Assembly: GCF_032062105.1 (NCBI RefSeq)
Contig: NW_026941496.1
Coordinates: forward strand, 62,001 to 126,000
Direction of reading: 5' to 3'
Source of the DNA: Saccostrea cucullata
Lineage: Eukaryota
DNA: 64,000 nt
The notes under the pieces are model-generated. The model was not told the DNA's origin. It ran no database searches and worked only from the letters and a program-made list of their open reading frames with translations. This document shows positions 1,493 through 28,997 of the stretch, one piece after another. Position 1 is the first letter of the stretch. Each line of letters begins with the position of its first letter. A program made the position numbers and the translations under genes.

Positions 1493-4400
1493 CTTATTAA
1501 CAGAACAGAGTTCCATAGTTAGATAGCTCGCCTTGGACTGAAACTGTAATCGGTAGCCACACACCGTGGACATCTTGTTTTTCAGGTCCTGGAGAAAGGC
1601 GACAAGTATAGGTTTGGGGTTAACCCGGGGGAGACAGTGGATGTCCCGGGCCCTCAGACATACATCAGGGTAAGTGATGTCAGTCAGGGAGAAATAAAAT
1701 TAATATCGATTCCTTTTCTTTAAAGACAGTGTTTAAAAAAAACACAGATGCCTTAAAGCAATTGAATTTTTTCTAGTTGGTTTAAATAGTTTAGTCGCAT
1801 TAAGTTTCATTTTTCATTTAAACTTTGTTAATAATGTTAAATCATGATAAAAAATTGATTAAATTTTTAAGTGCGGTAACAAAAGGGAATAAATTTGAAA
1901 ATCAAAGAAAGTCTACAATTTTGCAATAAAATACCAGTATGATAGAGATTTGATATATATCGACGACGCATCACCAAAAAACATAAGTAATTCTATTCAT
2001 ATGACGACTTGATATATCCAAGAGAGTTCAACATGAAAGATACCACAGAGTCTGACATATGTTTCACAGTTTAATGTTTTACTTGAAAAAGAAGTTAATG
2101 GTAATGGTAGTCTAAAAATAAAGCTTAATGATAAAGTTAACGTGATTACGTAAACTCTTTATCATTAACTTCCCTTTAAATACAGCGATATAATTTTATC
2201 AGCTGAATATCATCTCTTTCAGTTGATTTAATACACAAGAGCAAGCTCTTAGTCTAATTTTATACAATTTCTAAAAGAGGCAAGCTGTTGACAAACAAGT
2301 TGATGAAACAAAAGTATCAATAGTTCTACGGTCGATACAATGACATTGTCATCAAATACACTATATCATTAAGTCAAATGCTGACTGACATTTTGCATTC
2401 TAATTGTTAGGCAATTATATACACACTGTATTGTCGACGGATTTTTTCCGTTATTTCCTGATCCTGACTAGAAGCACACAGCGCGTGTGACCGGTCGGTA
2501 CTTTTCAATAGTGCCAGATCCAACCTCTGATTGTTTGCTCTGCTTCTGATTTTGTTGTTTGAATTGATTTTTTAGCTTCAATACTGGCTTGAAAACCAAT
2601 CTAAGTCCAAAAAATATAAATCAACCCATTAGTTTATTCTTCTTGTTTGTTTCAGTTGTATCCTTAAGTTGAAAATCAAAATATTTATTAATAATCATTT
2701 CCATGTGAGCATAATTGCAGAAGAGATGTAACAGGACTGTAAGTTTTTTTTTCACCATTTCCTTTTTGAATTAATAACATTTTTTTTTCATCTCCGATTT
2801 GACTTTATATATTTCTGAAATCTATAAAAAGAGGATGTGACTACTCGACAGTTAATAAACCAATGTATTTTTAAGATGGTACATGTATATTAAAGGATAT
2901 GTAAACACCCGGTCCCCCAGAGGTCTGAAATGGATCTGGTAGTAGATTATGTCCTCCTCGTTTTCAGGTAGTCGATATCCATACTGCAAAATTAAGCAGA
3001 AAAGAAACAAAAATAAAATCAAACAAAAAAAAAATCAAAGAAAATCATATGATACACTTCTTCAAATTTTTTATCCCACAGGAAATACTATTATTGTCAG
3101 TAAAGATATAAATTGATTATTACAAAATTAGAATACATTTGATCAATTGATCTTGACTTACTGAATTTTTCCAGTGTCTTTTGATTTCTTTGTAGGATTT
3201 GAACGGACCATCTGTAGGCAGCTGTCGACCAATGCCCACTATCTGTCCCTTTTTCATACTGAGGTTGAAGTTTCTTTTTTGATCACATTCTTTAACTTTG
3301 GTTACATTGTCAAAATAGATTTTTGAGCGCTTTGAATTAACAATTGGCAAAAAAAAAAAATGAAATTTAAAAAAAAGCTAACGTACCTTGGTAACACGTG
3401 GCACCATGTAGAACCAATAGAATCTCCAGAAATAACAAAGTTACGGTCTTCCGTAAACTTTTTTAAACTTTGAGGAAGAAGTTCAATGTCAGAAAGCTAC
3501 AATTTAGAAAACAACTTAAACTGAACTGAGTAAGATAACTGTTTAGTACATAATATGGATATCTAGTCAATTCTCTCTTGTAGAATGTTGGTGAAACGCA
3601 CTAGTTTTACACCTTACCTGTAGGGCAGGAAACCTGACAGTGGACGCTACGAGGGACAGATGCAGCTGACCAAAAGTGACCACCAGGTCCATTTCTGGGT
3701 AAAGATAAGTACAATACTTCAAGATGCTCATTCATGAAAAGGAAAGAACGACAACTCGAAGAGAAAAATGAACTTACTGACGGCATTATCATATCCTTGG
3801 TGTGATAGAAAATCTCGACCTAGAGAAGACATTTTGGCTTTAGCACTATAATATAACTAAACTCAGGAATCACAAAATTGTATGTCTTGTTTAATTTGTC
3901 TCTTTTACCCTGAATGAGCCACTGCCCTGCTTTGTTCCAGGATGGGGCGATTCTGGCCAGCAAGGTGTAGTGTATACAGGACTGGAACAAGGCTGTCGTC
4001 ACAGGCTGGGGGTCACTACACTAAACATACAATGTGTAGTTAGTACACCCTCACAAACTGTGCACCTCCTCCGTAATTACTTGCCTAAATATAATTGAAC
4101 CTTACCAGGACAAAGCGTTATATATTGATTTTCAGATGGACGATATCAATGAAGCCTTTATAAATGTAACCAAAACTTGTTGACCAGAATAAGTCCATTG
4201 TCATGTTCTAAATTTTGAATTTACCGGGTGGGAGTAAACACAAAATTTAGAAGTTGTCATGTTCTAAGTTTTGTATTTACTCCCACCCGGTAAATTCAAA
4301 ATTTAGAACAAGACACCATGATGAGATGCAATGCACCCTGTCCTAGTGTCTGTATTTCTTTCACCTAAATCTGGACACCATGTACTTTATGTAAGAAATG

Positions 4401-7400
4401 CATTTCCCATTGTTCTTTAACTTGATCTTGCCAACTCTGGTTACACGAGACATAATCATTATGACTTTGTAAGTAGACTCAATTACTTGTGGTAACTGGA
4501 AACCCAGCCCAACTCAGCTTTGTTATTTCTCTTGGATCAAATTATAACACCTGTTTTTCAAAAATTTCATGTTAATATTTATTCAGCCATGCGTCATGTA
4601 CTATCTCATATGGAATAAATACCTGTAAACCGATCTTGGAAAATCTTGCTTGTAATTTCCCAGTGTTAAATAACGTCCTCTGAAATGAACCACACGAATT
4701 TACATTTTGTATTTCAGTGCCCTTTAAATTTATTAAATTTTTGTGAATATAACAAATGCTTATAAATAGGATGTTATATATACATGTGTACATGAAGTTT
4801 GCTGAACACGGGAAGGAAAAAAATTACCTTCAGTACAACGTGAAATGCATTGTCCGTGTTAAAGGAAGGCGTTGCTATAATTTCTGGCTCCGTAAATATT
4901 AGCTCTCTGTAAAATATTAAACTTATTTTCTAGTAAAAAACTTTACATGTACATAATATTTGAATGTTTAACAAAATAATAAAACAGCGTCGTGATTCCA
5001 CCGAAATAAGCTTTGCGTTAAATAAAACAGGTTTCACTTGTGAAAAAAATAAGCTATGTAGACCATTTGCTTCATTTTAGGCTGTAGCTTTTTTGTTGGT
5101 CTTTGTTCATATCTGATTTTTTTTTTCGTAGATGCAAATAACTTAAAAATACCGAAGACATGTATATTATAAACATGCATTTGGCATCTTAAGTATAACC
5201 TCTGGAACACAATGATAAAATCCTTTTTGAAAATAATATTTTTTTTTTAGAAAACATAGAATCAATTTATAACGTTCTTACGCATGACGGCACCCTCAAC
5301 ATGATTTATGCATATCATGACTATCTATGTTTAAGATAAATTCATCTGTTTACTAATATAAAAATGGAATATATATTATATTTTTTGAATAAACTAGAAA
5401 TACAATGTGTTAGTAAAATGCCCAAGATTATTACAGTAATACGGTATACGGTAAAAATTGACCAAAAATAACGTTTTACATTGAAATGATCATTTAGAGT
5501 TATTTCTCTTATCAGCCTACATGTATCATTGACGTCTTCATGAGAAATAATACTATAATTTCTTGAGAAAAAAATGTACTGTCATATAAAAAAAATCTAA
5601 TTACCATTTTTTGCAGAACTGCAGGTAGATGGGGAAAAAATCGGTCAGGTAAGTTACGAATCTACTCGTAAAATTTTCCATTTATGGTATGTTTTTTTTT
5701 TTGGCCCCCGTAATTGAAGATTCGGGATGGGGATAGATTTTGCCCTGTCCGTCCATTTTTCTGTCCGTCTGTGTGTTTGTCTCTTTGTCCGCAAAAATTT
5801 TAACCTTGCCCATAACTTTTAAGTGGATGGGGCTATGGTTTCATATTTCACAGGTGTACAGTGAACCAAACTTCTAAGTGTTCACGGTCACCTAACATTT
5901 TTAAGTTATAAAGAACAAATGCATACAAAAAATAATATCTTTAATTCATGGTTAATGATGCATATTTCAGTTCGATGTTGCGTAATTTTCAAGTAAGTAT
6001 CTCGTAAGATTTTAAAGCAAAGTGTCATGGACATAATGTACGCTCAAAATAAAATTCACATAAAACAATATTTATGGAATTAGACCACCACTCGCTCTAA
6101 TTACTGCGACATCCTTTTCTCATGGATACCATGTAGCCCAGAATAGGAGATTGACCCATCTGCTGCCACACGTTTTGCAGGGATCTTTCAAAACCGTTGA
6201 AATTGTGTGGAGGGGGGGGGGGGGCTTTGACATTACTGTTAAAAGTCCCAAATGTGTTCAATGGGATTCAGATCCGGTGAGTTAGCAGGCCAATGCGCGA
6301 AAAAGCCTTTTGGTCTTTATCTTGGGCGTTTGTAGGTAAGTACACCTCTTTCAGGATGATTCAGACTGTTTAAGATGATACTGGACTGCCATGCGCACCA
6401 AATTGTCGCCATTTTCTTACTGTTGAAGTTGTTGATTTAAATGTTTCTAAAGTGGTTCAGGACCATGTAACAATGTTTTTGACCTCGTTGTAACGAGAAA
6501 CCTTGGCCTCAGACGAAGATTCAGATCACTTCTGGTTTGGTTAAATTTTGTCCAAAGCTTACAAATTGTGAAAAGTATGCGATGAGAATGACAAGTAGTT
6601 TTTAAATAAATACATTTATTAGAGTGAAACTTAGAAGTTTTGTTAAGTGTATTCCTTGTGACAACACCTTTCTGAGGGTACCACCAAATTTGACCTCTTG
6701 ATCTTGGAATCTGACCCCCTTTTACCAAAAAGGCCCTAACTTTAACCTTGGCAATAACTTTTGAATAGTTGGTGCTAGCCCTCTGCTAGGGCTTACATAC
6801 ATGTACTTTACATAAGTTTTTTTACTGTGACAAGACCTTTCCATGGGTATAAATATTTTTGACCTTTTGAACTTGACTTTAGAGTTTGACTTTTAAAAAT
6901 CTTTAACTTTGGCCACAACTATTGAATAGTTTTATACTTCACAGGTGTATTCCTTGTGACAAAATCTTCTTTAGATGCGAACAATTTTGTTTTTGAATTT
7001 GAATTTAAATTGAATTTGAGAATCTTCAGTCCTCGCTATGGGCTTCTATATATGGGGGCATGAGTTTTCCACAAACACTTCTAGTTTAATATGGCAAGTT
7101 TGAACTTCATGTACCTAATATTGTACTCCTTCATCCAATGTATTGCATCAAAAATTATTTTTAAAGTACTTTATTTGCGAACCTCTGTCTATCCGAATTT
7201 TCGTTCCCAGAGAGCTACAATTTTGTAATAGTATAGTTACGCCTGGTTATATGTGCAACGAATCATAATTTCATTTCCTTCACGGGGCCTTGTTTGTTTG
7301 TTTGTCTATAGTGGTAAAATTTATTGTCGGGCAAAGAAGGTACGTCACCGTAGAGATACCAGTTGTCCAAACATTATGAGATGATATTCCTTATAAATCT

Positions 7401-7701
7401 ATGGCCTAATACTAGAAAATGCTGTCAAATTCTTTTACAGAATACACGTGTACATGTATGATGTATACGAGTCTGCCAAGACAGCGGGTACTAAGCTAAC
7501 AAAGTGCCTGTGCCCTGTAGTTCTACCAGGCCCTGGTGTACTTGAATATTTTACTTACCTGCATCGTATGATGTGAGGTTGTAGAGTTGATGAAATATGG
7601 AGGTTTCTTGTTATGCATACGGTAATTGCAAGCAATTCTTCTAAGGGAGGACATTCAGCCAAAACAATGACAGGTGTGGAAATATTGTCTTTACCGTACA
7701 T
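1493..7701 (-). CDS. C18orf63: C18orf63 / DUF4708 family protein, 10 coding exons visible (327 codons); no stop reached, so the gene probably continues past the left edge
   Basis: Exons (minus): 7559-7701 (ATG at 7701), 4828-4906, 4623-4679, 3909-4020, 3778-3819, 3618-3694, 3387-3496, 3162-3258, 2901-2983, 1493-1673. All phases join into one open frame. Eight introns are GT-AG and one is AT-AC. The peptide has [64 protein letters not shown] and FTYPDVCLR, matching my recollection of human C18orf63 ([47 protein letters not shown]). The last visible exon ends at a GTGAGT donor. Confidence 0.9.
1674..2900 (-). other. U12-type (minor spliceosome) AT-AC intron of the C18orf63 homolog
   Basis: Minus-strand 5' site ATATCCTTT (2900-2892), branch-like TTCTCCCTGAC (1693-1683) about 10 nt before the terminal AC (1675-1674). 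Splicing gives in-frame VF-T-YPDVC. Confidence 0.9.
1935..2590 (+). mobile_element. Penelope-like retroelement 3' fragment inside the U12 intron
   Basis: YIDD, KDTTES, ISQLI and FYGRYND remnants followed by the shared 3' UTR. Confidence 0.8.
4199..4315. repeat. Near-perfect palindrome (about 55-bp arms) in a C18orf63 intron
   Basis: tgttctaaattttgaatttaccgggtgggagtaaa ... tttactcccacccggtaaattcaaaatttagaaca. Confidence 0.85.
5695..7086 (+). mobile_element. Non-autonomous Helentron/DINE-1-like element with internal repeats, interrupted by a Tc1 derivative
   Basis: T-run start with GCCCCCG..CGGG stem, (GTCC/GTCT)n-like microsatellite, repeated units (aaccttggccataactttt..tattccttgtgaca..gacctt) and terminal GGGGGCAT..cacaaacacttctagtt. 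Confidence 0.7.
5859..6649 (-). mobile_element. Tc1/mariner internal-deletion derivative
   Basis: TA|CAGTGAACCAAACTTCTAAG ... CTTAGAAGTTTTGTTAAGTG|TA. The minus strand retains WPANSPDLNPIEHIWD (Tc1 catalytic-E region). The empty site cacaggtgTAttccttgtgac is seen at about 6940. Confidence 0.88.
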
Positions 7702-9744: not shown

Positions 9745-11841
9745 TTAATCGTCCTCTTCTTCTCGCAGAGGTTTCTCTTCCATTTTGCCATTGACAACAG
9801 TTTTATCGCCATTCACAGCCAGTGATATATCGCCCCTTTTCGACACGTCCTCCTTGGGCATATTTGCATACTTATCCCTGTTACACCGCTTGTAGATAAG
9901 ATAGATAATGGTCAACAAGAAGAGAGGTAAGGGCGTCATTACCCCAGAAGCTATGGGGGCCACGGCCGCAATTTCCCCATCGGGTGGCGGGGAGGCCGTG
10001 AACATAAGTAATATGGCGATTCCCTGATTCTGAATCCCGGTCTCTATAATGATTGTTTTAACCTTGGTCCACGACTGACGCAGAATCAGAGAAATGATTC
10101 CTGACAGCACATAACCACAATATGGCAGTAAAGCACCAGCGAGTATGACTTTAGGCTCGAAGAACTTAAAAATAAACAAGTTTGTGTAGATGCCGACTGA
10201 CAGTAGGACGACGATGGCGATGATAGTGACGGGGGTGATGATCTTCATCAGAATCTTCGTTAGACGTGGTAATTTGTACTTAATGGCGACCCCTACCAGT
10301 AACGGCACCACCAGGATCACCAGGGTCGTGAAAATGTTCAGGAACGGGATGTTCATCTCCGTGTCAGTGCTCAGTTCATTGATAAAAACTTGACCAAGTG
10401 TGTAGATCCATAGCGGCATCATTGCTGCAAGTATAGAAAATTAAATCTGAATGTAATCACGATCAAAGCGTTTTAATATGCATTTTAATTGTGTTGTTGT
10501 TAAGAAAACAAGAAAAATATAATTTAAAAAACTCATTTTTAGATTCTGTAAATCAGTTTCAATACCTAAGGCTGCAATTGTGCTGATGGTCGTCATGGTG
10601 ATTGAGAGTGACAGGTCTCCATCCAGTAAATGAGAGTATATGTTGCTAACCCCGCCTCCTGGACATGTACCGGAAATGAAAATCCCCAGACCCACGGCAT
10701 GGTCCTCTGGAATCACCAGCTTTGCTATGCCAAATGCAATCTAAACGTCAAGAAGTAAGATATTTTTAAAGTTTAGAATAAGAAATATCAAAGATAGAAA
10801 AACTATACTTATTTTGCTGCTGACGTAATGAGCCTGATATTAATTTCTCATACGAATCAGTACTGTACATGTTCCACTTGATCCGAGATAAACTTCACTT
10901 TATTTTTTTCTATGGATCCAATGAAGTAGAACAGAACAAAACGGGTAAGTTTTATTATTTCAACAAAATTACATTTTTATCAGATAAAGTCAAAGTAATT
11001 AAATCCCCCTCCCTTTTCTCTGCAAGTTGCTTGATGGATCAGACCTAAAACTTTTTTCAGAGAGAATGAGAGTCAACCACTCTAAAATCTGCAGATAGAT
11101 AGATGTGAAATGTTATGTGCTTACCAATGGCATTAGGATATACTGACAACTGATTCCGATCGCTGGGGCAACAGGGCGGCGCAAGTTCTCCTTTACAACT
11201 CCAAGGTCAAGTTTACATCCAAAGGCCAAAGTTACGAAAACAAGGAAAATGTAAATAACAACACGGAAAATCGTATCGAGCACTCCCATTTTTCTAAAGA
11301 CAACAACATGATAAGTGCTATAGTCTTCAACAGATAGGTTGTTTTGCATGTTTCCTAATTTACGGAGTTCAAAGGCCAGAAATGTCCGTCCTATGAGTTC
11401 GCCGTAAAGGTTAAAGGTTAAGTTTCCTCTAATGCCCATGCGATGAATCACGTGATAAGGCTGGGAGACTGTAGATGCATCCTTGCCCATAGGTAAAACG
11501 TTTGGTCCGTCAGTAACATTTACCAAAATTTCAGTGGCATTTCCACAGGAAATGATCGTGCTGTCTGTTTGTCTGACGGTGAATACCTTTTTTCCTTTAC
11601 TAAATACTCCCAGTCGGTATTTTTCGCTGCTATGATTACAATACAAGGTATATTCTACACTGAACGTAGTCTGTTGATACATCATTAGAATGAACGGTTG
11701 ATGCGGTCCCCACTTCAGCTCAAAGTGGTCGTGTGTACGATTTGGCATTATTTCTTCGACATCGTATCCTTGTCTGGCATTTACACCCACCACAGTCACC
11801 AGAATTAAGGAACAAACCACTTGTTTCATAATTTGTAACAT
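9745..11841 (-). CDS. SLC10 family sodium/bile acid cotransporter-like protein (about 523 aa, 3 exons) with signal peptide and long extracellular N-terminus
   Basis: Exons 11125-11841 (ATG 11841; alternative ATG 11829), 10566-10740 and 9745-10424, with GT-AG junctions and consistent phases. SBF motifs: FGCKLD..VKENLRRPVAPAIGISCQYILMPL, CPGGGVSN, LDGDLSLSITMT, IETGIQN. Confidence 0.92.
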
Positions 11842-14534
11842 CGTATACAACACTAGCACTTTCTCAGTTTCGCATGCTTTAGGTGCAATACGAAGTTTGT
11901 TGTGGTAAATCAGCCGATCGTGTAATCTCCTTTAGAAGTCTTGGCGATATAAAAGGATGTCAGGTAAATCTGATAGCAGGTAAGTCATACCTGTAAATTA
12001 ATCCAATCAAACTCGGCTTTAAATTCAGTGGCCCAACTTCACGGACTGTTAAATCTCAGAAGCTGAAAGATATCTCTAAAGAAAACAAATTCTTCACTTG
12101 ATTAAGATCCTATCCGATACTTACACTGTTTTTGTTTACCTGTTAGGAATGTCGATGTTATTTGATTCTCAGACTGAACGCTCTTAATTAACATTCAAAG
12201 CCTACTTAAATGAAAGGACCTTTTAACAAGAAATGATGTAAGAATGACTTAATTTAGTTAGATTCGAATGACAATATAAATAATGGCTCAATATTTTCCC
12301 GAAAATTAAACGTGGTATTGCTACCAGACTAGAAAAATCAAATGAATACGACAAAAATTACAAGATTAAAGAATCCTCAAGGTTCCCTTTATCAAATAGG
12401 ATTACATATTATGTATACATAGCCTGATTACACAGTTTTTCTGAACAGGTTAAATGGTGAAGAATGTGCATATTCAGTATTAATTTTTATTACCGGCGGT
12501 GAAGCACTGAAGACTACGAGACGGACGTTTAATTGACCGTTTTCCAAATAAGAAAATAATTTTAAAAAATAATATATTTTTAAAAAATCCTAACAACAAC
12601 ATTTCAGGTTCCCCCCTCATCATAAATTAAATATTATTGTGTTTTTATTGGCCAGTCGATGTTTTGATTTTGTGAAATTGCACGCATTTAAACCTGAACT
12701 TGAACTGTTGAAATGATTTATTCTTAATATTTGAATGAATAACAATTTTAAAATATGAAATACATACAGATTGTGCTAGAGCGTTAAAATAAACAAAGTG
12801 ACATCTCAAGTTTGCAAACAGGCATTGAAATGTTTTAGATACTGTCACCTGGTTTAGATTTTCATATGTGTGTATACTTAATAAAATCCTGATACTCTCC
12901 CTGACAGAGACTGTCCACTCGTGTTTTATTGACTTATCACGGGGCCATTGTTTGTACAGCCAACACACTCCTTTATTGGCAAAACAATATGATATTTTAA
13001 TGATAGGTCTGAATTTTTACTGACCGATAGAAAAGTGCATGGGGTTATAAGTAAACGGCACTTTTAAAAAGTCAGACATTCCATCACACAGTAAGGGTGT
13101 CAGTGATGGAATATGGCAGAAGAAACAGTTTTTTTTCGGTCAAAAGAAATTTCACAAATAACAAACAGTTATTTTCAATCTTTAAGAGTTTGTTAAAATA
13201 ATTATTATTACTGTATTTATTTGGATTTACCCAATTTCATCTTAAATAATCACAGTCGATCACTTTGTAGTGGTGAAAAATTATTCCAAATCACTATGAA
13301 GTAGAATTTATTCAAAAACTTCTACATGAGAAAGAGAAAACACTTTCTTTCACCTTCAAATCGATATCCAGATATATTTACGACGTGTTATCAATAAACA
13401 ATCAAGAATCCATTTATATGTTCAATCAAACTTGCAATGAAAAAGCACCACATATTCTGTCGCATGTTTCATATTTGGACATGACGATAGGGCCAACTTT
13501 TGACTAAATTGTATATAAAGATGACCAGTTTCACTAACATGTTCTGGATACGACCAACTTTTAAACCAAAGCAGGCTACTGAGAGACAAGTTAATGCTAC
13601 AAGGATTTCAAATATCTCGTTTAAATTTAATAGTTCGTAAATTCCATAATCATTAATATGACAAAGTTAGCAAATATAGTCCATCATTAGGCAGTTAGGT
13701 CGCTTTTGATCGATGTGTTGGTACCAGTAGTTAAGTTTTTTAATTATGCTAAAGTTGACAACAGAATATTCAATCTTTCTGCTCATGTACAAAAAAAAAA
13801 CCCTTGGCGGTTGAGACCGGTCGACAAGGATGGCTACTCTTCCAAAGATCCTAATTCCCTGACTGGAATTTCTGGGTGCTCTTTGACTCATTCACAGGTT
13901 AGTATTATTTGTAGATTACTAGTACTTCACCTTTTTTATATACCAGTACATTTTTGCAAGTGGCATTGGTGGTCATTGTAGGGTCATAAGTTAACCATTT
14001 GAGCCCTGTGTAGAGTCTCCCGGACTCTGAACCCATTGGGGAATTTTTCAACTCTGGTAGATAACTTCTCGATTATTCTTGTTATAGTTTAATTGATTTT
14101 CTATCTTTCATCTTGGCTCATCTTCATCAAGTATACAGACAGTTCTGCAAAATGTCCATAAGTTGAAAGAAAATTATCAGATGTCCTATATCCATTTTAA
14201 CCTCGCTTGTACTATGAGGATTTTTTTCAACCCTGATTTTTGAGAGGTCAATGTTTGCTGTGCTCCTGATTTGTATTGTTTGAATGGACTACTGTTCGTT
14301 ATCTCCATATATTATGTCATGCATAACTGCTTGATATGACAATGCCAACTGTTTTGTGCTAGTTGTCTAAGAGTAATTGCTTTCGAAAATTGCACTTAAA
14401 ACTTTTAGTTCTCCAAAGTCCTCAGTCATAAAACAACCCACTTTTTTCTCCGTAATTGCGATGAACAATAATTGATTGATTTTTTTTCTCACTTTATAGT
14501 CAATAAGCTGGAAAATCCTATATCTTTAGGAACG

Positions 14535-27275: not shown

Positions 27276-28997
27276 ATGGCCTCGAAAGAAAAACAAGAAC
27301 CTGAAACGCAAAGCCCAACTGGACCATCAACTGCACAGAAAGTCGTCAAGACTGGCTTTTTGGTTTTTATATGGATCTGTATAGTAAGTGAAAGAAAAAT
27401 GACGACTTTATTTTGAACATTGATCTCCCATTTTATGCAATAAGAACACATGTAGTAAATAGTCGTTTACGCTAATAATGGTAAATGTATTCTTGTTTTA
27501 ATCCAGTAATTTTTTTTCGATATATAGGGTCTAAATTTGGAAATAACTGGACCAACACTGAAAGACCTTAAACTTCGTGCACATCTGGACTATGAAGAGG
27601 TATCGAGAGCTGTTTCCGGTCGAAGTATCGGGTTCTTTATTGGAGCTGCAATGGGAGGGTTTATTGTGGATAAACTCGATCCTCTCTGTGACCTAGTGCT
27701 GGCTATTTGTCTGGACCTAATGGGAACAGCTACTATTGTAGCTCCACATTCTGAAAATATCGGCTTGATGTGGTTCCTTTTTGTTATGCAAGGCACATTT
27801 GAAGGAGTGATCAATATAGGTACAGTCATAAAAGAGTTATACTTTGGCTTAACCAATCATATAATGTCATCTAAAGATTTTTTAAACTCTCATTGACACA
27901 AACTGATTATTTATGATTTTATAATTGCAGCTGGTCAAAAGCTTATTCTGGAAATTTGGCAAGAAAAAGCGTCATCTCCTCTTTTTCTTTTACACTTTGG
28001 ATTTGGAATTGGGTCCTTTATCGTTCCACAGATTGCAAATCCTTTTCTAGCTGTCCTTAAACCCAGCGCCGCAGCGAATGCCACTAACATCACCACGGTC
28101 GTACCTATATCAACAACGGAGACAACCGAATTACTGAGGGAGTCCAGAATAGAGTGGGCATACCTCATCGTTGCTTTAATTGCCGTAGGGGTTTCATTTG
28201 TGTTTTATTACTACCAGTTCTGCGGTAAATGGTCAAGGAATACTCAAGCCAGTAAATCTAAAAGTGATACGGATGCTCAGCTAACAATCCGCGAAATAAT
28301 TGATCCTGCAACATGTGCAAATGGGAATCGTCTGTTTGGTATACACGTCCTGGGACTTCTCTTTCTTTTCTTTTTTAATTGTACTGGCGGTGAACGAGTT
28401 TATGGTAAATTCATTCGCAGTTTCGCTATTGACCACAACAAACTAGACGGAGATGAGGCATCTCTGATGAACAGCTCCTTCTGGATTAGTTTTGCTATTG
28501 GGCGTTTTTCTGGATTTGTTGCTGCAAACTGGATTTCCATTCGGATTATTGTTTTGATAGAGGCAACAGGAGCAATGGTCTCCGCGGTTCTTCTCAACAT
28601 ATTTGCAGAGGACAGCACTACGATGCTATGGGTCCTAACGCAGCCAATGGCCTTCTTCATTGCCCCTTGTTTTCCGTCCGGTGTTGGATGGGGCGATTTT
28701 CATATTCATATGTCTGGAGTTGGAATAACTTTTCTCCTTTTAGGAGGAGCGTTAGGTGGTGTTTGCTACATGTGGATCATAGGGTACTTGTATGAGAACA
28801 ACGGTCCTCTTTCTTTCTTTCGCACTATACTGGCCTATGGGATTATAATGTGTGTCCTGGCTTTCATAATGCATTTCTCGACCTGGGGTAAAGGGCATCG
28901 ATTTATAAAGGAGACAAAAGAAGTCGAGGTAGAGGCTGTGGATCCAAAAGCCGTGAATCTTAAATTTGATGAGAAGTTGCATAGTGAGAAATTATAA
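27276..28997 (+). CDS. MFS transporter, MFSD4/SLC60 (sodium-dependent glucose transporter 1-like), copy A, about 488 aa
   Basis: Exons 27276-27383, 27528-27819 and 27931-28997; GT-AG; frame continuous. Motifs GPTLKDL, LHFGFGIGSFIVPQIANPFL and FWISFAIGRFSG are typical of MFSD4-like proteins. Confidence 0.9.

What the first reader, a model, noticed from the sequence alone, without database searches (positions are those of the whole stretch)
1493..4020. C18orf63/DUF4708 protein shows an Argonaute-like N-L1-PAZ motif order with no MID-PIWI in view
Seen: the spliced protein reads LLARIAPSWNKAGQWLIQGRDFL, then a beta-hairpin-like KMDLVVTFGQLHLSLVASTVRF, then WCHVLPSMKKGQIV and FKSYKEIKRHWKNSYGYRLP...YYQIHF...VFTYPDVCL. 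Established: Argonaute/PIWI proteins have GR(S/N)(F/Y)(F/Y) followed by the L1 hairpin (xLNxDxxxxxF), and a PAZ domain with SxxxY(F/Y)xxxYxxxL ... YLPxExC that binds small-RNA 3' ends. Inference: this uncharacterised family may be a stand-alone N-L1-PAZ nucleic-acid-end-binding module, possibly in germline small-RNA or transposon control. The resemblance is by eye only.
Basis: partly seen in the sequence, partly recalled or inferred. Interest (0 to 1): 0.8.

Follow-up and report, generated by a model that had tools for sequence, protein, structure and literature searches.

The report
Half-Argonaute (N-L1-PAZ) germline orphan protein
This oyster gene is the orthologue of the uncharacterised, meiosis-enriched animal protein C18orf63, and its conserved domain is confidently predicted to fold like the front half of an Argonaute (N, L1, PAZ, L2) with no MID or PIWI half, giving an orphan family its first testable idea of function.

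Summary
Window 1493-4020 (minus strand) holds exons 4-10 of a 15-exon gene. The gene starts at window 7701 and ends about 3 kb beyond the window start. It is the single-copy DUF4708/C18orf63 orthologue of an ostreid oyster.

No sequence method (HMMER, Pfam, hhalign) detects the link, so homology rests on fold and colinear domain order.

The rest of the protein is a long disordered region with an R-I-[IV]-P-x-F motif and a C-terminal SAP/HeH-like domain. There is no MID or PIWI in the gene or on the contig.

Nucleic-acid 3'-end binding is plausible but untested. A MED13-like peptide-binding scaffold is the main rival.

No paper in the library links C18orf63 to Argonaute. One intron is U12-type AT-AC.

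The parts
7559..7701 (-). Coding exon 1 (Met1 to Arg48), start of the N-domain-like part
   Evidence: ATG ORF. tblastn to P0002 residues 1-48 at 92% identity. GT-AG junction to exon 2.
4828..4906 (-). Exon 2, N-domain-like part
   Evidence: Pfam DUF4708 profile positions 38-70. Junctions.
4623..4679 (-). Exon 3, end of the N-domain-like part
   Evidence: tblastn to P0002. Junctions.
3909..4020 (-). Exon 4: L1-like helix and the most conserved family motif (YTLLARIAPSWNKAGQWLIQG)
   Evidence: Pfam DUF4708 at 40.3 bits, E 3e-10. The invariant residues C108, Y111, P119, W121 and N122 lie here.
3778..3819 (-). Exon 5 (RDFLSHQGYDNAV), an L1-like loop
   Evidence: 100% identical to P0002. Junctions.
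3618..3694 (-). Exon 6: L1-like beta-hairpin (MDLVVTFGQLHLSLVASTVRFPALQ)
   Evidence: Model strands 141-151 and 154-165. tblastn.
3387..3496 (-). Exon 7: start of the PAZ-like domain (helix and first strands, ...WCHVLP)
   Evidence: Pfam DUF4708 profile positions 162-197. Isolated PAZ structures align to model residues 166-276.
3162..3258 (-). Exon 8: PAZ-like strand and helix (SMKKGQIV ... FKSYKEIKRHWKNS)
   Evidence: Pfam hit at 32.9 bits, profile positions 198-229. Near-invariant residues S206, K208, G210, P220, F225, Y228 and W235.
2901..2983 (-). Exon 9: PAZ-like part (YGYRLP ... YYQIHF ... VFT)
   Evidence: Pfam hit at 34.2 bits, profile positions 231-263. Near-invariant residues Y239, G240, Y241, P244 and F257.
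1674..2900 (-). U12-type AT-AC intron between exons 9 and 10
   Evidence: The 5' splice site reads ATATCCTTT. A branch-site-like TCTCCCTGAC lies 10-19 nt before the terminal AC. This is the only junction that restores ...VFTYPDVCL... as in P0002. There is no read-level confirmation.
1493..1673 (-). Exon 10: last PAZ-like strand (YPDVCL) and the L2-like strand-helix part, ending the folded domain
   Evidence: tblastn at 90% identity to P0002 residues 266-326. Model elements E278-281 and H286-299, with pLDDT falling after about residue 320.

Best explanation
The locus encodes the oyster orthologue of C18orf63 (Pfam DUF4708), a protein found across bilaterian animals. Its conserved N-terminal ~320 residues are an Argonaute-superfamily N-lobe, in the order N domain (about 10-95), L1 (about 96-170), PAZ-like domain (about 166-276) and a short L2-like element (about 277-320). 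There is no MID and no PIWI/RNase H half, so it cannot anchor a guide 5' end or slice. A ~350-residue disordered Ser/Thr/Pro/Lys-rich region follows, carrying one or two conserved R-I-[IV]-P-x-F motifs. The protein ends in a SAP/HeH-like helix-extended-helix domain, a type that usually binds DNA or chromatin. The most likely working model is a chromatin-tethered adaptor of meiotic germ cells. In this model the PAZ-like groove, rich in invariant aromatic and basic residues, holds a single-stranded nucleic-acid 3' end (RNA or DNA). What is shown: gene structure, family membership, fold and domain order, and absence of MID-PIWI. What is inferred: common descent with Ago/MED13, nucleic-acid end binding, chromatin tethering, and a germline role in the oyster.
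Against: No sequence-based method detects Ago, PAZ or MED13. Profile HMMs against PDB sequences found nothing. Pfam at E<=10 on 30, 81 and 10 family members gave no PAZ, ArgoN or ArgoL1 hit. hhalign against a TtAgo-clade N-lobe profile gave probability 0.1%. The family HMM against this genome's own Ago and Piwi exons gave E>2. The best structural match is MED13, whose PAZ contacts a peptide of its own L2 and whose channel held no nucleic acid in the solved structure. An Argonaute-like fold therefore does not imply nucleic-acid binding. By secondary structure, the PAZ-like part lacks the beta-hairpin that precedes the helix in canonical PAZ (residues 217-227 are a loop), so the pocket may be incomplete. 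No coordinates were available to test pocket geometry. No expression data could be obtained for this organism.
Confidence: 0.55

Rival explanations
1. It is a MED13-like protein scaffold. The Argonaute-like N-lobe binds no nucleic acid, and its PAZ-like groove holds a peptide instead. That peptide could be the protein's own conserved R-I-[IV]-P-x-F motif from the disordered region (auto-regulation) or a partner protein. The SAP tail supplies the only nucleic-acid contact.
Against: The PAZ-like part keeps a dense set of invariant aromatic and basic residues (S206, K208, Y228, W235, Y239, Y241, F257, Y267). This suits a conserved ligand such as a nucleic-acid end at least as well as a co-evolving peptide. 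Lepidopteran homologues are only about 320 aa, with no disordered region or motif, yet they keep the domain.
Confidence: 0.3
2. It is half of a split Argonaute. The N-lobe pairs in trans with a separate MID-PIWI protein or with a canonical PIWI/AGO, as the N-L1-L2 (APAZ) partner proteins do with short prokaryotic Argonautes. This would rebuild or modulate a bilobed effector.
Against: No stand-alone MID-PIWI gene is known in animals (my own knowledge, not tested here). All Piwi-domain matches in this genome lie in loci that also carry PAZ or ArgoN exons. There is no linkage or co-occurrence evidence.
Confidence: 0.08
3. The resemblance is not homology. It is either a prediction artefact or a convergent arrangement of common alpha/beta modules, and DUF4708 is an unrelated fold family.
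Confidence: 0.07

Closest known systems
MED13 / MED13L (Argonaute-like subunit of the Mediator CDK8 kinase module; PDB 8tqc_D, 7kpv_D)
   Different: MED13 also has MID and PIWI domains and MED12/cyclin C-binding insertions, which DUF4708 lacks. DUF4708 ends in a SAP/HeH-like domain. No Med13_N Pfam hit was found.
PIWI-clade and AGO-clade Argonautes (MILI 9ij4, Siwi 9nhb, hAgo2 4w5t) and long prokaryotic Agos (KmAgo, TtAgo, AaAgo, CtAgo)
   Different: DUF4708 has no MID or PIWI, so no guide 5' pocket and no slicer site. No Pfam PAZ, ArgoN or ArgoL1 signature is detectable. The PAZ-like part appears to lack the hairpin before the helix. The tail is a disordered region plus SAP.
APAZ / N-L1-L2 partner proteins of short prokaryotic Argonautes (SiAgo Aga1 9lgw_B, SPARTA 8j8h_B, SPARDA 9qbl_C, SPARHA 9om4_A, AfAgo-N 8pvv_C)
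   Different: They lack a PAZ domain, carry effector domains (TIR, nuclease), act with a MID-PIWI partner encoded next door, and are prokaryotic. DUF4708 has a PAZ-like module and no adjacent partner gene.
Dicer PAZ domains (Giardia 2ffl, human 4ngb, plant DCL3 and DCL4)
   Different: Dicer's PAZ sits in a platform-PAZ-connector cassette with RNase III domains, and Dicer has no N or L1 modules of the Argonaute type.
SAP / HeH / LEM helix-extended-helix domains (Ku70, SLX4, PIAS1, Hcc-1, emerin)
   Same: The C-terminal ~45 residues hit Pfam Ish1, HeH and SAP in many family members and match these folds.
   Different: Scores are modest. The oyster sequence itself reaches only E 0.057 for HeH. 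Seven of 29 full-length representatives, and the lepidopteran proteins, lack the tail.

Membership tests
DUF4708 / C18orf63 (Pfam PF15813) | Match to PF15813 above the gathering score (27 bits) | tested here: met
   Single exons score 40.3, 34.2, 32.9 and 28.2 bits at colinear profile positions. The near-identical orthologue P0002 scores 276.9 bits over profile positions 6-274.
DUF4708 / C18orf63 (Pfam PF15813) | Orthology: single copy and colinear with named C18orf63-like proteins | tested here: met
   There is one locus in the 1.17 Gb assembly. All 15 exons are colinear with the Saccostrea echinata protein. Relatives are named C18orf63 or C18orf63-like in molluscs, annelids, echinoderms, hemichordates, a tunicate, insects, fishes and tetrapods.
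Argonaute/PIWI proteins (sensu stricto) | N domain, L1 linker, PAZ domain and L2 linker in that order (N-lobe) | tested here: met
Argonaute/PIWI proteins (sensu stricto) | MID domain with a guide 5'-phosphate pocket | tested here: not met
   The remaining ~420 residues have no Pfam domain except a SAP/HeH-like tail. The exons beyond the window are low-complexity.
Argonaute/PIWI proteins (sensu stricto) | PIWI (RNase H-like) domain | tested here: not met
   No PF02171 match lies on contig C23633. All 31 matches lie in other loci. P0002 shows none.
Argonaute/PIWI proteins (sensu stricto) | Sequence signatures of Pfam PAZ (PF02170), ArgoL1 (PF08699) and ArgoN (PF16486) | tested here: not met
   No hit at E<=10 in 30 + 81 + 10 family members. 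One Atlas arthropod cluster reportedly has PAZ in 25% of members, but I could not reproduce this.
PAZ domain (functional sense) | Aromatic and basic pocket that binds a 3' end | not testable with these tools
What can be said is that invariant or near-invariant W200, F225, Y228, W235, Y239, Y241, F257, Y267, S206 and K208 lie in the PAZ-like part.
MED13 family | Med13_N / Med13_C signatures and a MID-PIWI lobe binding MED12 and cyclin C | tested here: not met
   MED13 is the top fold match, but there is no Med13 Pfam hit and no MID-PIWI lobe.
SAP / HeH (Pfam clan of LEM/SAP helix-extended-helix motifs) | ~35-45-residue two-helix motif with a conserved Gly and hydrophobic pattern, matching SAP, HeH or Ish1 models | tested here: inconclusive
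U12-type (minor spliceosome) AT-AC intron | 5' splice site /ATATCCTT, branch site TCCTTRAC-like 10-15 nt before the 3' end, terminal AC | tested here: met
   The intron starts ATATCCTTT at window 2900. It ends ...TCTCCCTGACTGACATCAC at 1674, with the branch A at -11. It is the only junction that gives the conserved VFTYPDVCL reading. There is no RNA-read confirmation.

The most novel reading that the evidence does not exclude
DUF4708/C18orf63 is a third eukaryotic lineage of the Argonaute superfamily, beside AGO/PIWI and MED13. It is an N-lobe-only 'half-Argonaute', tethered to chromatin by a SAP domain. In meiotic germ cells its PAZ-like pocket captures free 3' ends, either small or nascent RNA or resected ssDNA at meiotic breaks, without any guide-directed slicing.
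Probability: 0.3. Interest if true: 0.85.

Novelty: new variant of a known kind. Interest (0 to 1): 0.72.

Why it matters
C18orf63 is conserved from molluscs and insects to humans. It is repeatedly listed among oocyte, meiosis and testis genes, yet it has no known fold or function. No paper in the searched library connects it with Argonaute.

If it is an Argonaute N-lobe with a PAZ-like module and a SAP tail, several things follow:
- It gives concrete experiments: 3'-end binding assays, pocket mutants, chromatin association, and fertility phenotypes.
- It adds an animal example of a stand-alone N-lobe. Among the structures matched here, the stand-alone N-lobe proteins were the partners of short prokaryotic Argonautes.
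- Together with MED13, it shows that the Argonaute fold has been reused in eukaryotic nuclei well beyond small-RNA slicing.
- PAZ is generally regarded as confined to Argonaute and Dicer (my own knowledge). This family would be a further carrier.

Tried and rejected
Negative sequence-level tests:
- Sequence profile of the domain (A1), and of its PAZ-like part (A5, 81 sequences), against all PDB sequences. Only chance hits appeared: eL31, Nnf1.
- Pfam at E<=10 on every member of A1 and A5 and on ten arthropod and tunicate homologues. Only DUF4708 was found.
- hhalign of A1 against a TtAgo-clade N-lobe profile. I obtained that profile through the pTT27 plasmid record and one word search. Probability was 0.1%. 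That clade is narrow and distant, so this is a weak test.
- Family HMM against six-frame open frames of this genome's own Ago and Piwi loci. Nothing scored below E 2.

Attempts that gave nothing useful:
- Finding the arthropod C18orf63-like members that carry Pfam PAZ (the lead). The last word search, with a lepidopteran query, returned only PF15813-annotated proteins.
- An apparently intron-poor PAZ gene in the genome turned out to be Dicer, not an Argonaute.
- A profile of the C-terminal domain against PDB sequences. Nothing was found.

Steps not carried out:
I searched exon by exon by reference. The Saccostrea echinata orthologue P0002 served as proxy for the fold; its N-lobe exons are mostly 83-100% identical to the window's (the short exons 2-3 align at 66-74%).

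Rejected ideas:
- That the R-I-[IV]-P-x-F motif is a PP1 RVxF or PCNA PIP motif. The patterns do not fit (my own knowledge).
- That a MID-PIWI part lies downstream. The next gene is an unrelated 541-aa open frame rich in long hydrophobic stretches, with no Pfam hit.

Full report
**What is in the sequence**

The window is G000:C23633:62001-126000 of a 1.17 Gb eukaryotic assembly. Translated one by one, the exons hit Pfam DUF4708 (PF15813) at successive profile positions: 38-70, 87-121 (40.3 bits, E 3e-10), 162-197, 198-229 and 231-263. The family has a single locus in the genome.

A 37-residue exon searched against 1.84 billion representatives returned 57 proteins. The best full-length one is P0002, 748 aa, from the oyster Saccostrea echinata. 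Its relatives are named C18orf63-like or C18orf63 homolog in bivalves, insects, a sea star, lizards and a newt. Wider searches add gastropods, a chiton, annelids, a nemertean, hemichordates, crinoids, sea urchins, Ciona, many fishes, a marsupial, a barnacle, a spider and Lepidoptera.

**Gene model**

tblastn of P0002 on the window and the adjoining contig (L005) gives a colinear 15-exon gene. A local junction search fixed all 14 junctions.
- Coding exons in the window are 7701-7559, 4906-4828, 4679-4623, 4020-3909, 3819-3778, 3694-3618, 3496-3387, 3258-3162, 2983-2901 and 1673-1493.
- Five more exons lie in L005, at 9844-9221, 9141-9048, 8576-8230, 7809-7723 and 7140-7009.
- Thirteen introns are GT-AG.
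- The intron between exons 9 and 10 (window 2900-1674) is AT-AC. It has a perfect U12-type 5' site (ATATCCTTT) and a branch-site-like TCTCCCTGAC 10-19 nt before the terminal AC.

Exons were searched by reference, and P0002 was used as proxy. Against P0002, the N-lobe exons are mostly 83-100% identical (the short exons 2-3 align at 66-74%), the disordered exons 64-72% and the last exon 89%.

**Fold**

An alignment of 30 N-terminal domains (A1) gave an AlphaFold2 model of P0002:1-335 with mean pLDDT 89.6 and pTM 0.86.

Foldseek against the PDB returned 119 hits at E<=1e-3. Every row shown is an Argonaute, a PIWI or MED13, with best E 4e-7 and probability 1.00. TM-scores are low (0.25-0.46), as expected for a hinged multi-domain lobe compared with proteins twice its size.

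VIA-align on those chains gave the following:
- hAgo2: residues 42-407.

An ESMFold model of a chordate homologue in the ESM Atlas superposes on my model at TM 0.87 (319 residues, rmsd 2.3), so a second predictor agrees. An arthropod C18orf63-like cluster there carries Pfam PAZ in 25% of its members.

A language-model feature search of the sequence, with DUF4708 clusters excluded, returned only PAZ, ArgoL1 and ArgoN clusters, scoring 0.91 down to 0.79. By the tool's own calibration this is a lead rather than proof.

From the model's secondary structure and these ranges I assign N to about 10-95, L1 to about 96-170, the PAZ-like part to about 166-276 and an L2-like element to about 277-320. The PAZ motifs (WCHVLPSMKKGQIV, FKSYKEIKRHWKNSYGYRLP, YYQIHF, VFTYPDVCL) fall in the PAZ-like part.

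**What sequence methods say**

Nothing detectable was found at the sequence level.
- Profile HMMs of the domain and of its PAZ-like part find no Ago, Dicer or MED13 chain among PDB sequences.
- Pfam at E<=10 finds only DUF4708 in 121 scans of members.
- hhalign against a TtAgo-clade N-lobe profile gives probability 0.1%.
- The family HMM scores no exon of this genome's own Ago and Piwi genes below E 2.

These resemble GRDFL, HLSLVASTVRF and VFTYPDVC. This is not statistically supported, and the exact register is open. Common descent therefore rests on the four-module colinear fold match, not on sequence.

**The rest of the protein**

After residue about 326 come roughly 350 residues rich in Ser, Thr, Pro, Lys and Gln, with no Pfam domain. 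Most full-length representatives keep one or two R-I-[IV]-P-x-F motifs there.

There is no MID or PIWI domain. None is found in P0002, in the remaining exons or in the next gene. No Piwi match lies on this contig, and all 31 genome matches lie in other loci. Lepidopteran homologues are only about 320 aa, which is the N-lobe alone.

**Mechanism**

Shown:
- An Argonaute-type N-lobe without the MID-PIWI half, so no guide 5' anchoring and no slicing.
- Stronger constraint on the N-lobe and the tail than on the linker.

Inferred:
- The PAZ-like part holds the densest cluster of invariant aromatic and basic residues in the family: W200, S206, K208, F225, Y228, W235, Y239, Y241, F257 and Y267. It is therefore the likeliest ligand site.
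- By analogy with PAZ, the ligand would be a single-stranded 3' end.
- The SAP-like tail would hold the protein on DNA or chromatin.

Vertebrate C18orf63 is listed as oocyte-enriched in chicken and human beside SPO11, REC114, SYCP1-2 and SPATA22. It is also listed among peri-meiotic genes of the human fetal ovary, and its promoter is hypermethylated in azoospermic testis. This fits a meiotic, nuclear role.

The main rival comes from MED13, the best structural match. Its PAZ contacts a segment of its own L2, a large disordered region follows its PAZ, no nucleic acid was seen in its channel, and its putative interface has diverged. DUF4708 could likewise be a peptide-binding scaffold, possibly for its own conserved linker motif.

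I put the fold assignment at about 0.9, common descent with the Ago/MED13 superfamily at about 0.7, and 3'-end binding at about 0.35.

**Novelty**

Thirty-seven papers in the library mention C18orf63, all in gene lists. None mentions DUF4708, and none mentions C18orf63 together with Argonaute. A recent survey of Argonaute structure and evolution that treats MED13 as the divergent relative does not mention this family. The Pfam copy used here still calls it a domain of unknown function. The link may be visible to anyone who runs a fold search on a public model, so I rate it a new variant of a known kind rather than categorically new.

**Limits**

- The comparison with eukaryotic Ago, PIWI and MED13 by profile-profile methods could not be run, because no full-length sequences of those families could be brought in by reference.

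Noticed in passing
window 1674-2900 (minus strand): U12-type AT-AC intron inside the PAZ-like coding region. The 5' site reads ATATCCTTT, a branch-site-like TCTCCCTGAC lies 10-19 nt upstream of the terminal AC, and the other 13 introns are GT-AG.
   Followed up: partly
L005:7009-7140 (minus; contig C23633:59009-59140, outside the window): The last exon encodes a conserved SAP/HeH-like helix-extended-helix domain (LNKVNSVTMISWLKTRGVQCRTKDKKQELVTKVL...). It is present in 22 of 29 full-length family representatives.
   Followed up: yes
L005:9221-9844 (minus), the large disordered exon: Two copies of a short conserved motif, R-I-[IV]-P-x-F (RIVPRF and RIVPVF here), sit in an otherwise poorly conserved Ser/Thr/Pro-rich region. 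One or two copies occur in most full-length homologues from molluscs to vertebrates. The binding partner is unknown.
   Followed up: partly
proteins P0199-P0234: Lepidopteran C18orf63-like proteins are only about 310-330 aa. They consist of the N-lobe alone, without the disordered region or SAP tail, and their PAZ-like part is more divergent than in other animals.
   Followed up: no
alignment A1, P0002 numbering: Conserved cysteines C47 (in the N-like part), C108 (L1-like, invariant), C201 and C271 (PAZ-like) are spread over three modules. Whether they lie close together in space (a metal site or disulfides) could not be checked without coordinates.
   Followed up: no
ESM Atlas clusters, rows 3 and 4: Unnamed protein clusters from green algae (680 aa, TM 0.72 over 309 residues) and from Nitrososphaerota archaea (580 aa, TM 0.62) share the N-lobe fold. 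They may be divergent Argonautes or further N-lobe proteins.
   Followed up: no
protein P0202: A 339-aa Mytilus galloprovincialis entry annotated as ATR kinase carries both PF00454 and a DUF4708 fragment. It is probably a merged gene model, but possibly a sign of neighbouring genes.
   Followed up: no
L016 = G000:C11058:21001-31000: Dicer gene with unusually long uninterrupted exons. A 680-aa open frame holds PAZ plus RNase III, and a 522-aa open frame holds the helicase and the partner-binding domain.
   Followed up: partly
window 9745-11859 (minus) and 27537-28997 (plus): Neighbouring open frames with long hydrophobic stretches look like membrane transporter exons. Nothing nearby is related to small-RNA pathways.
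   Followed up: no
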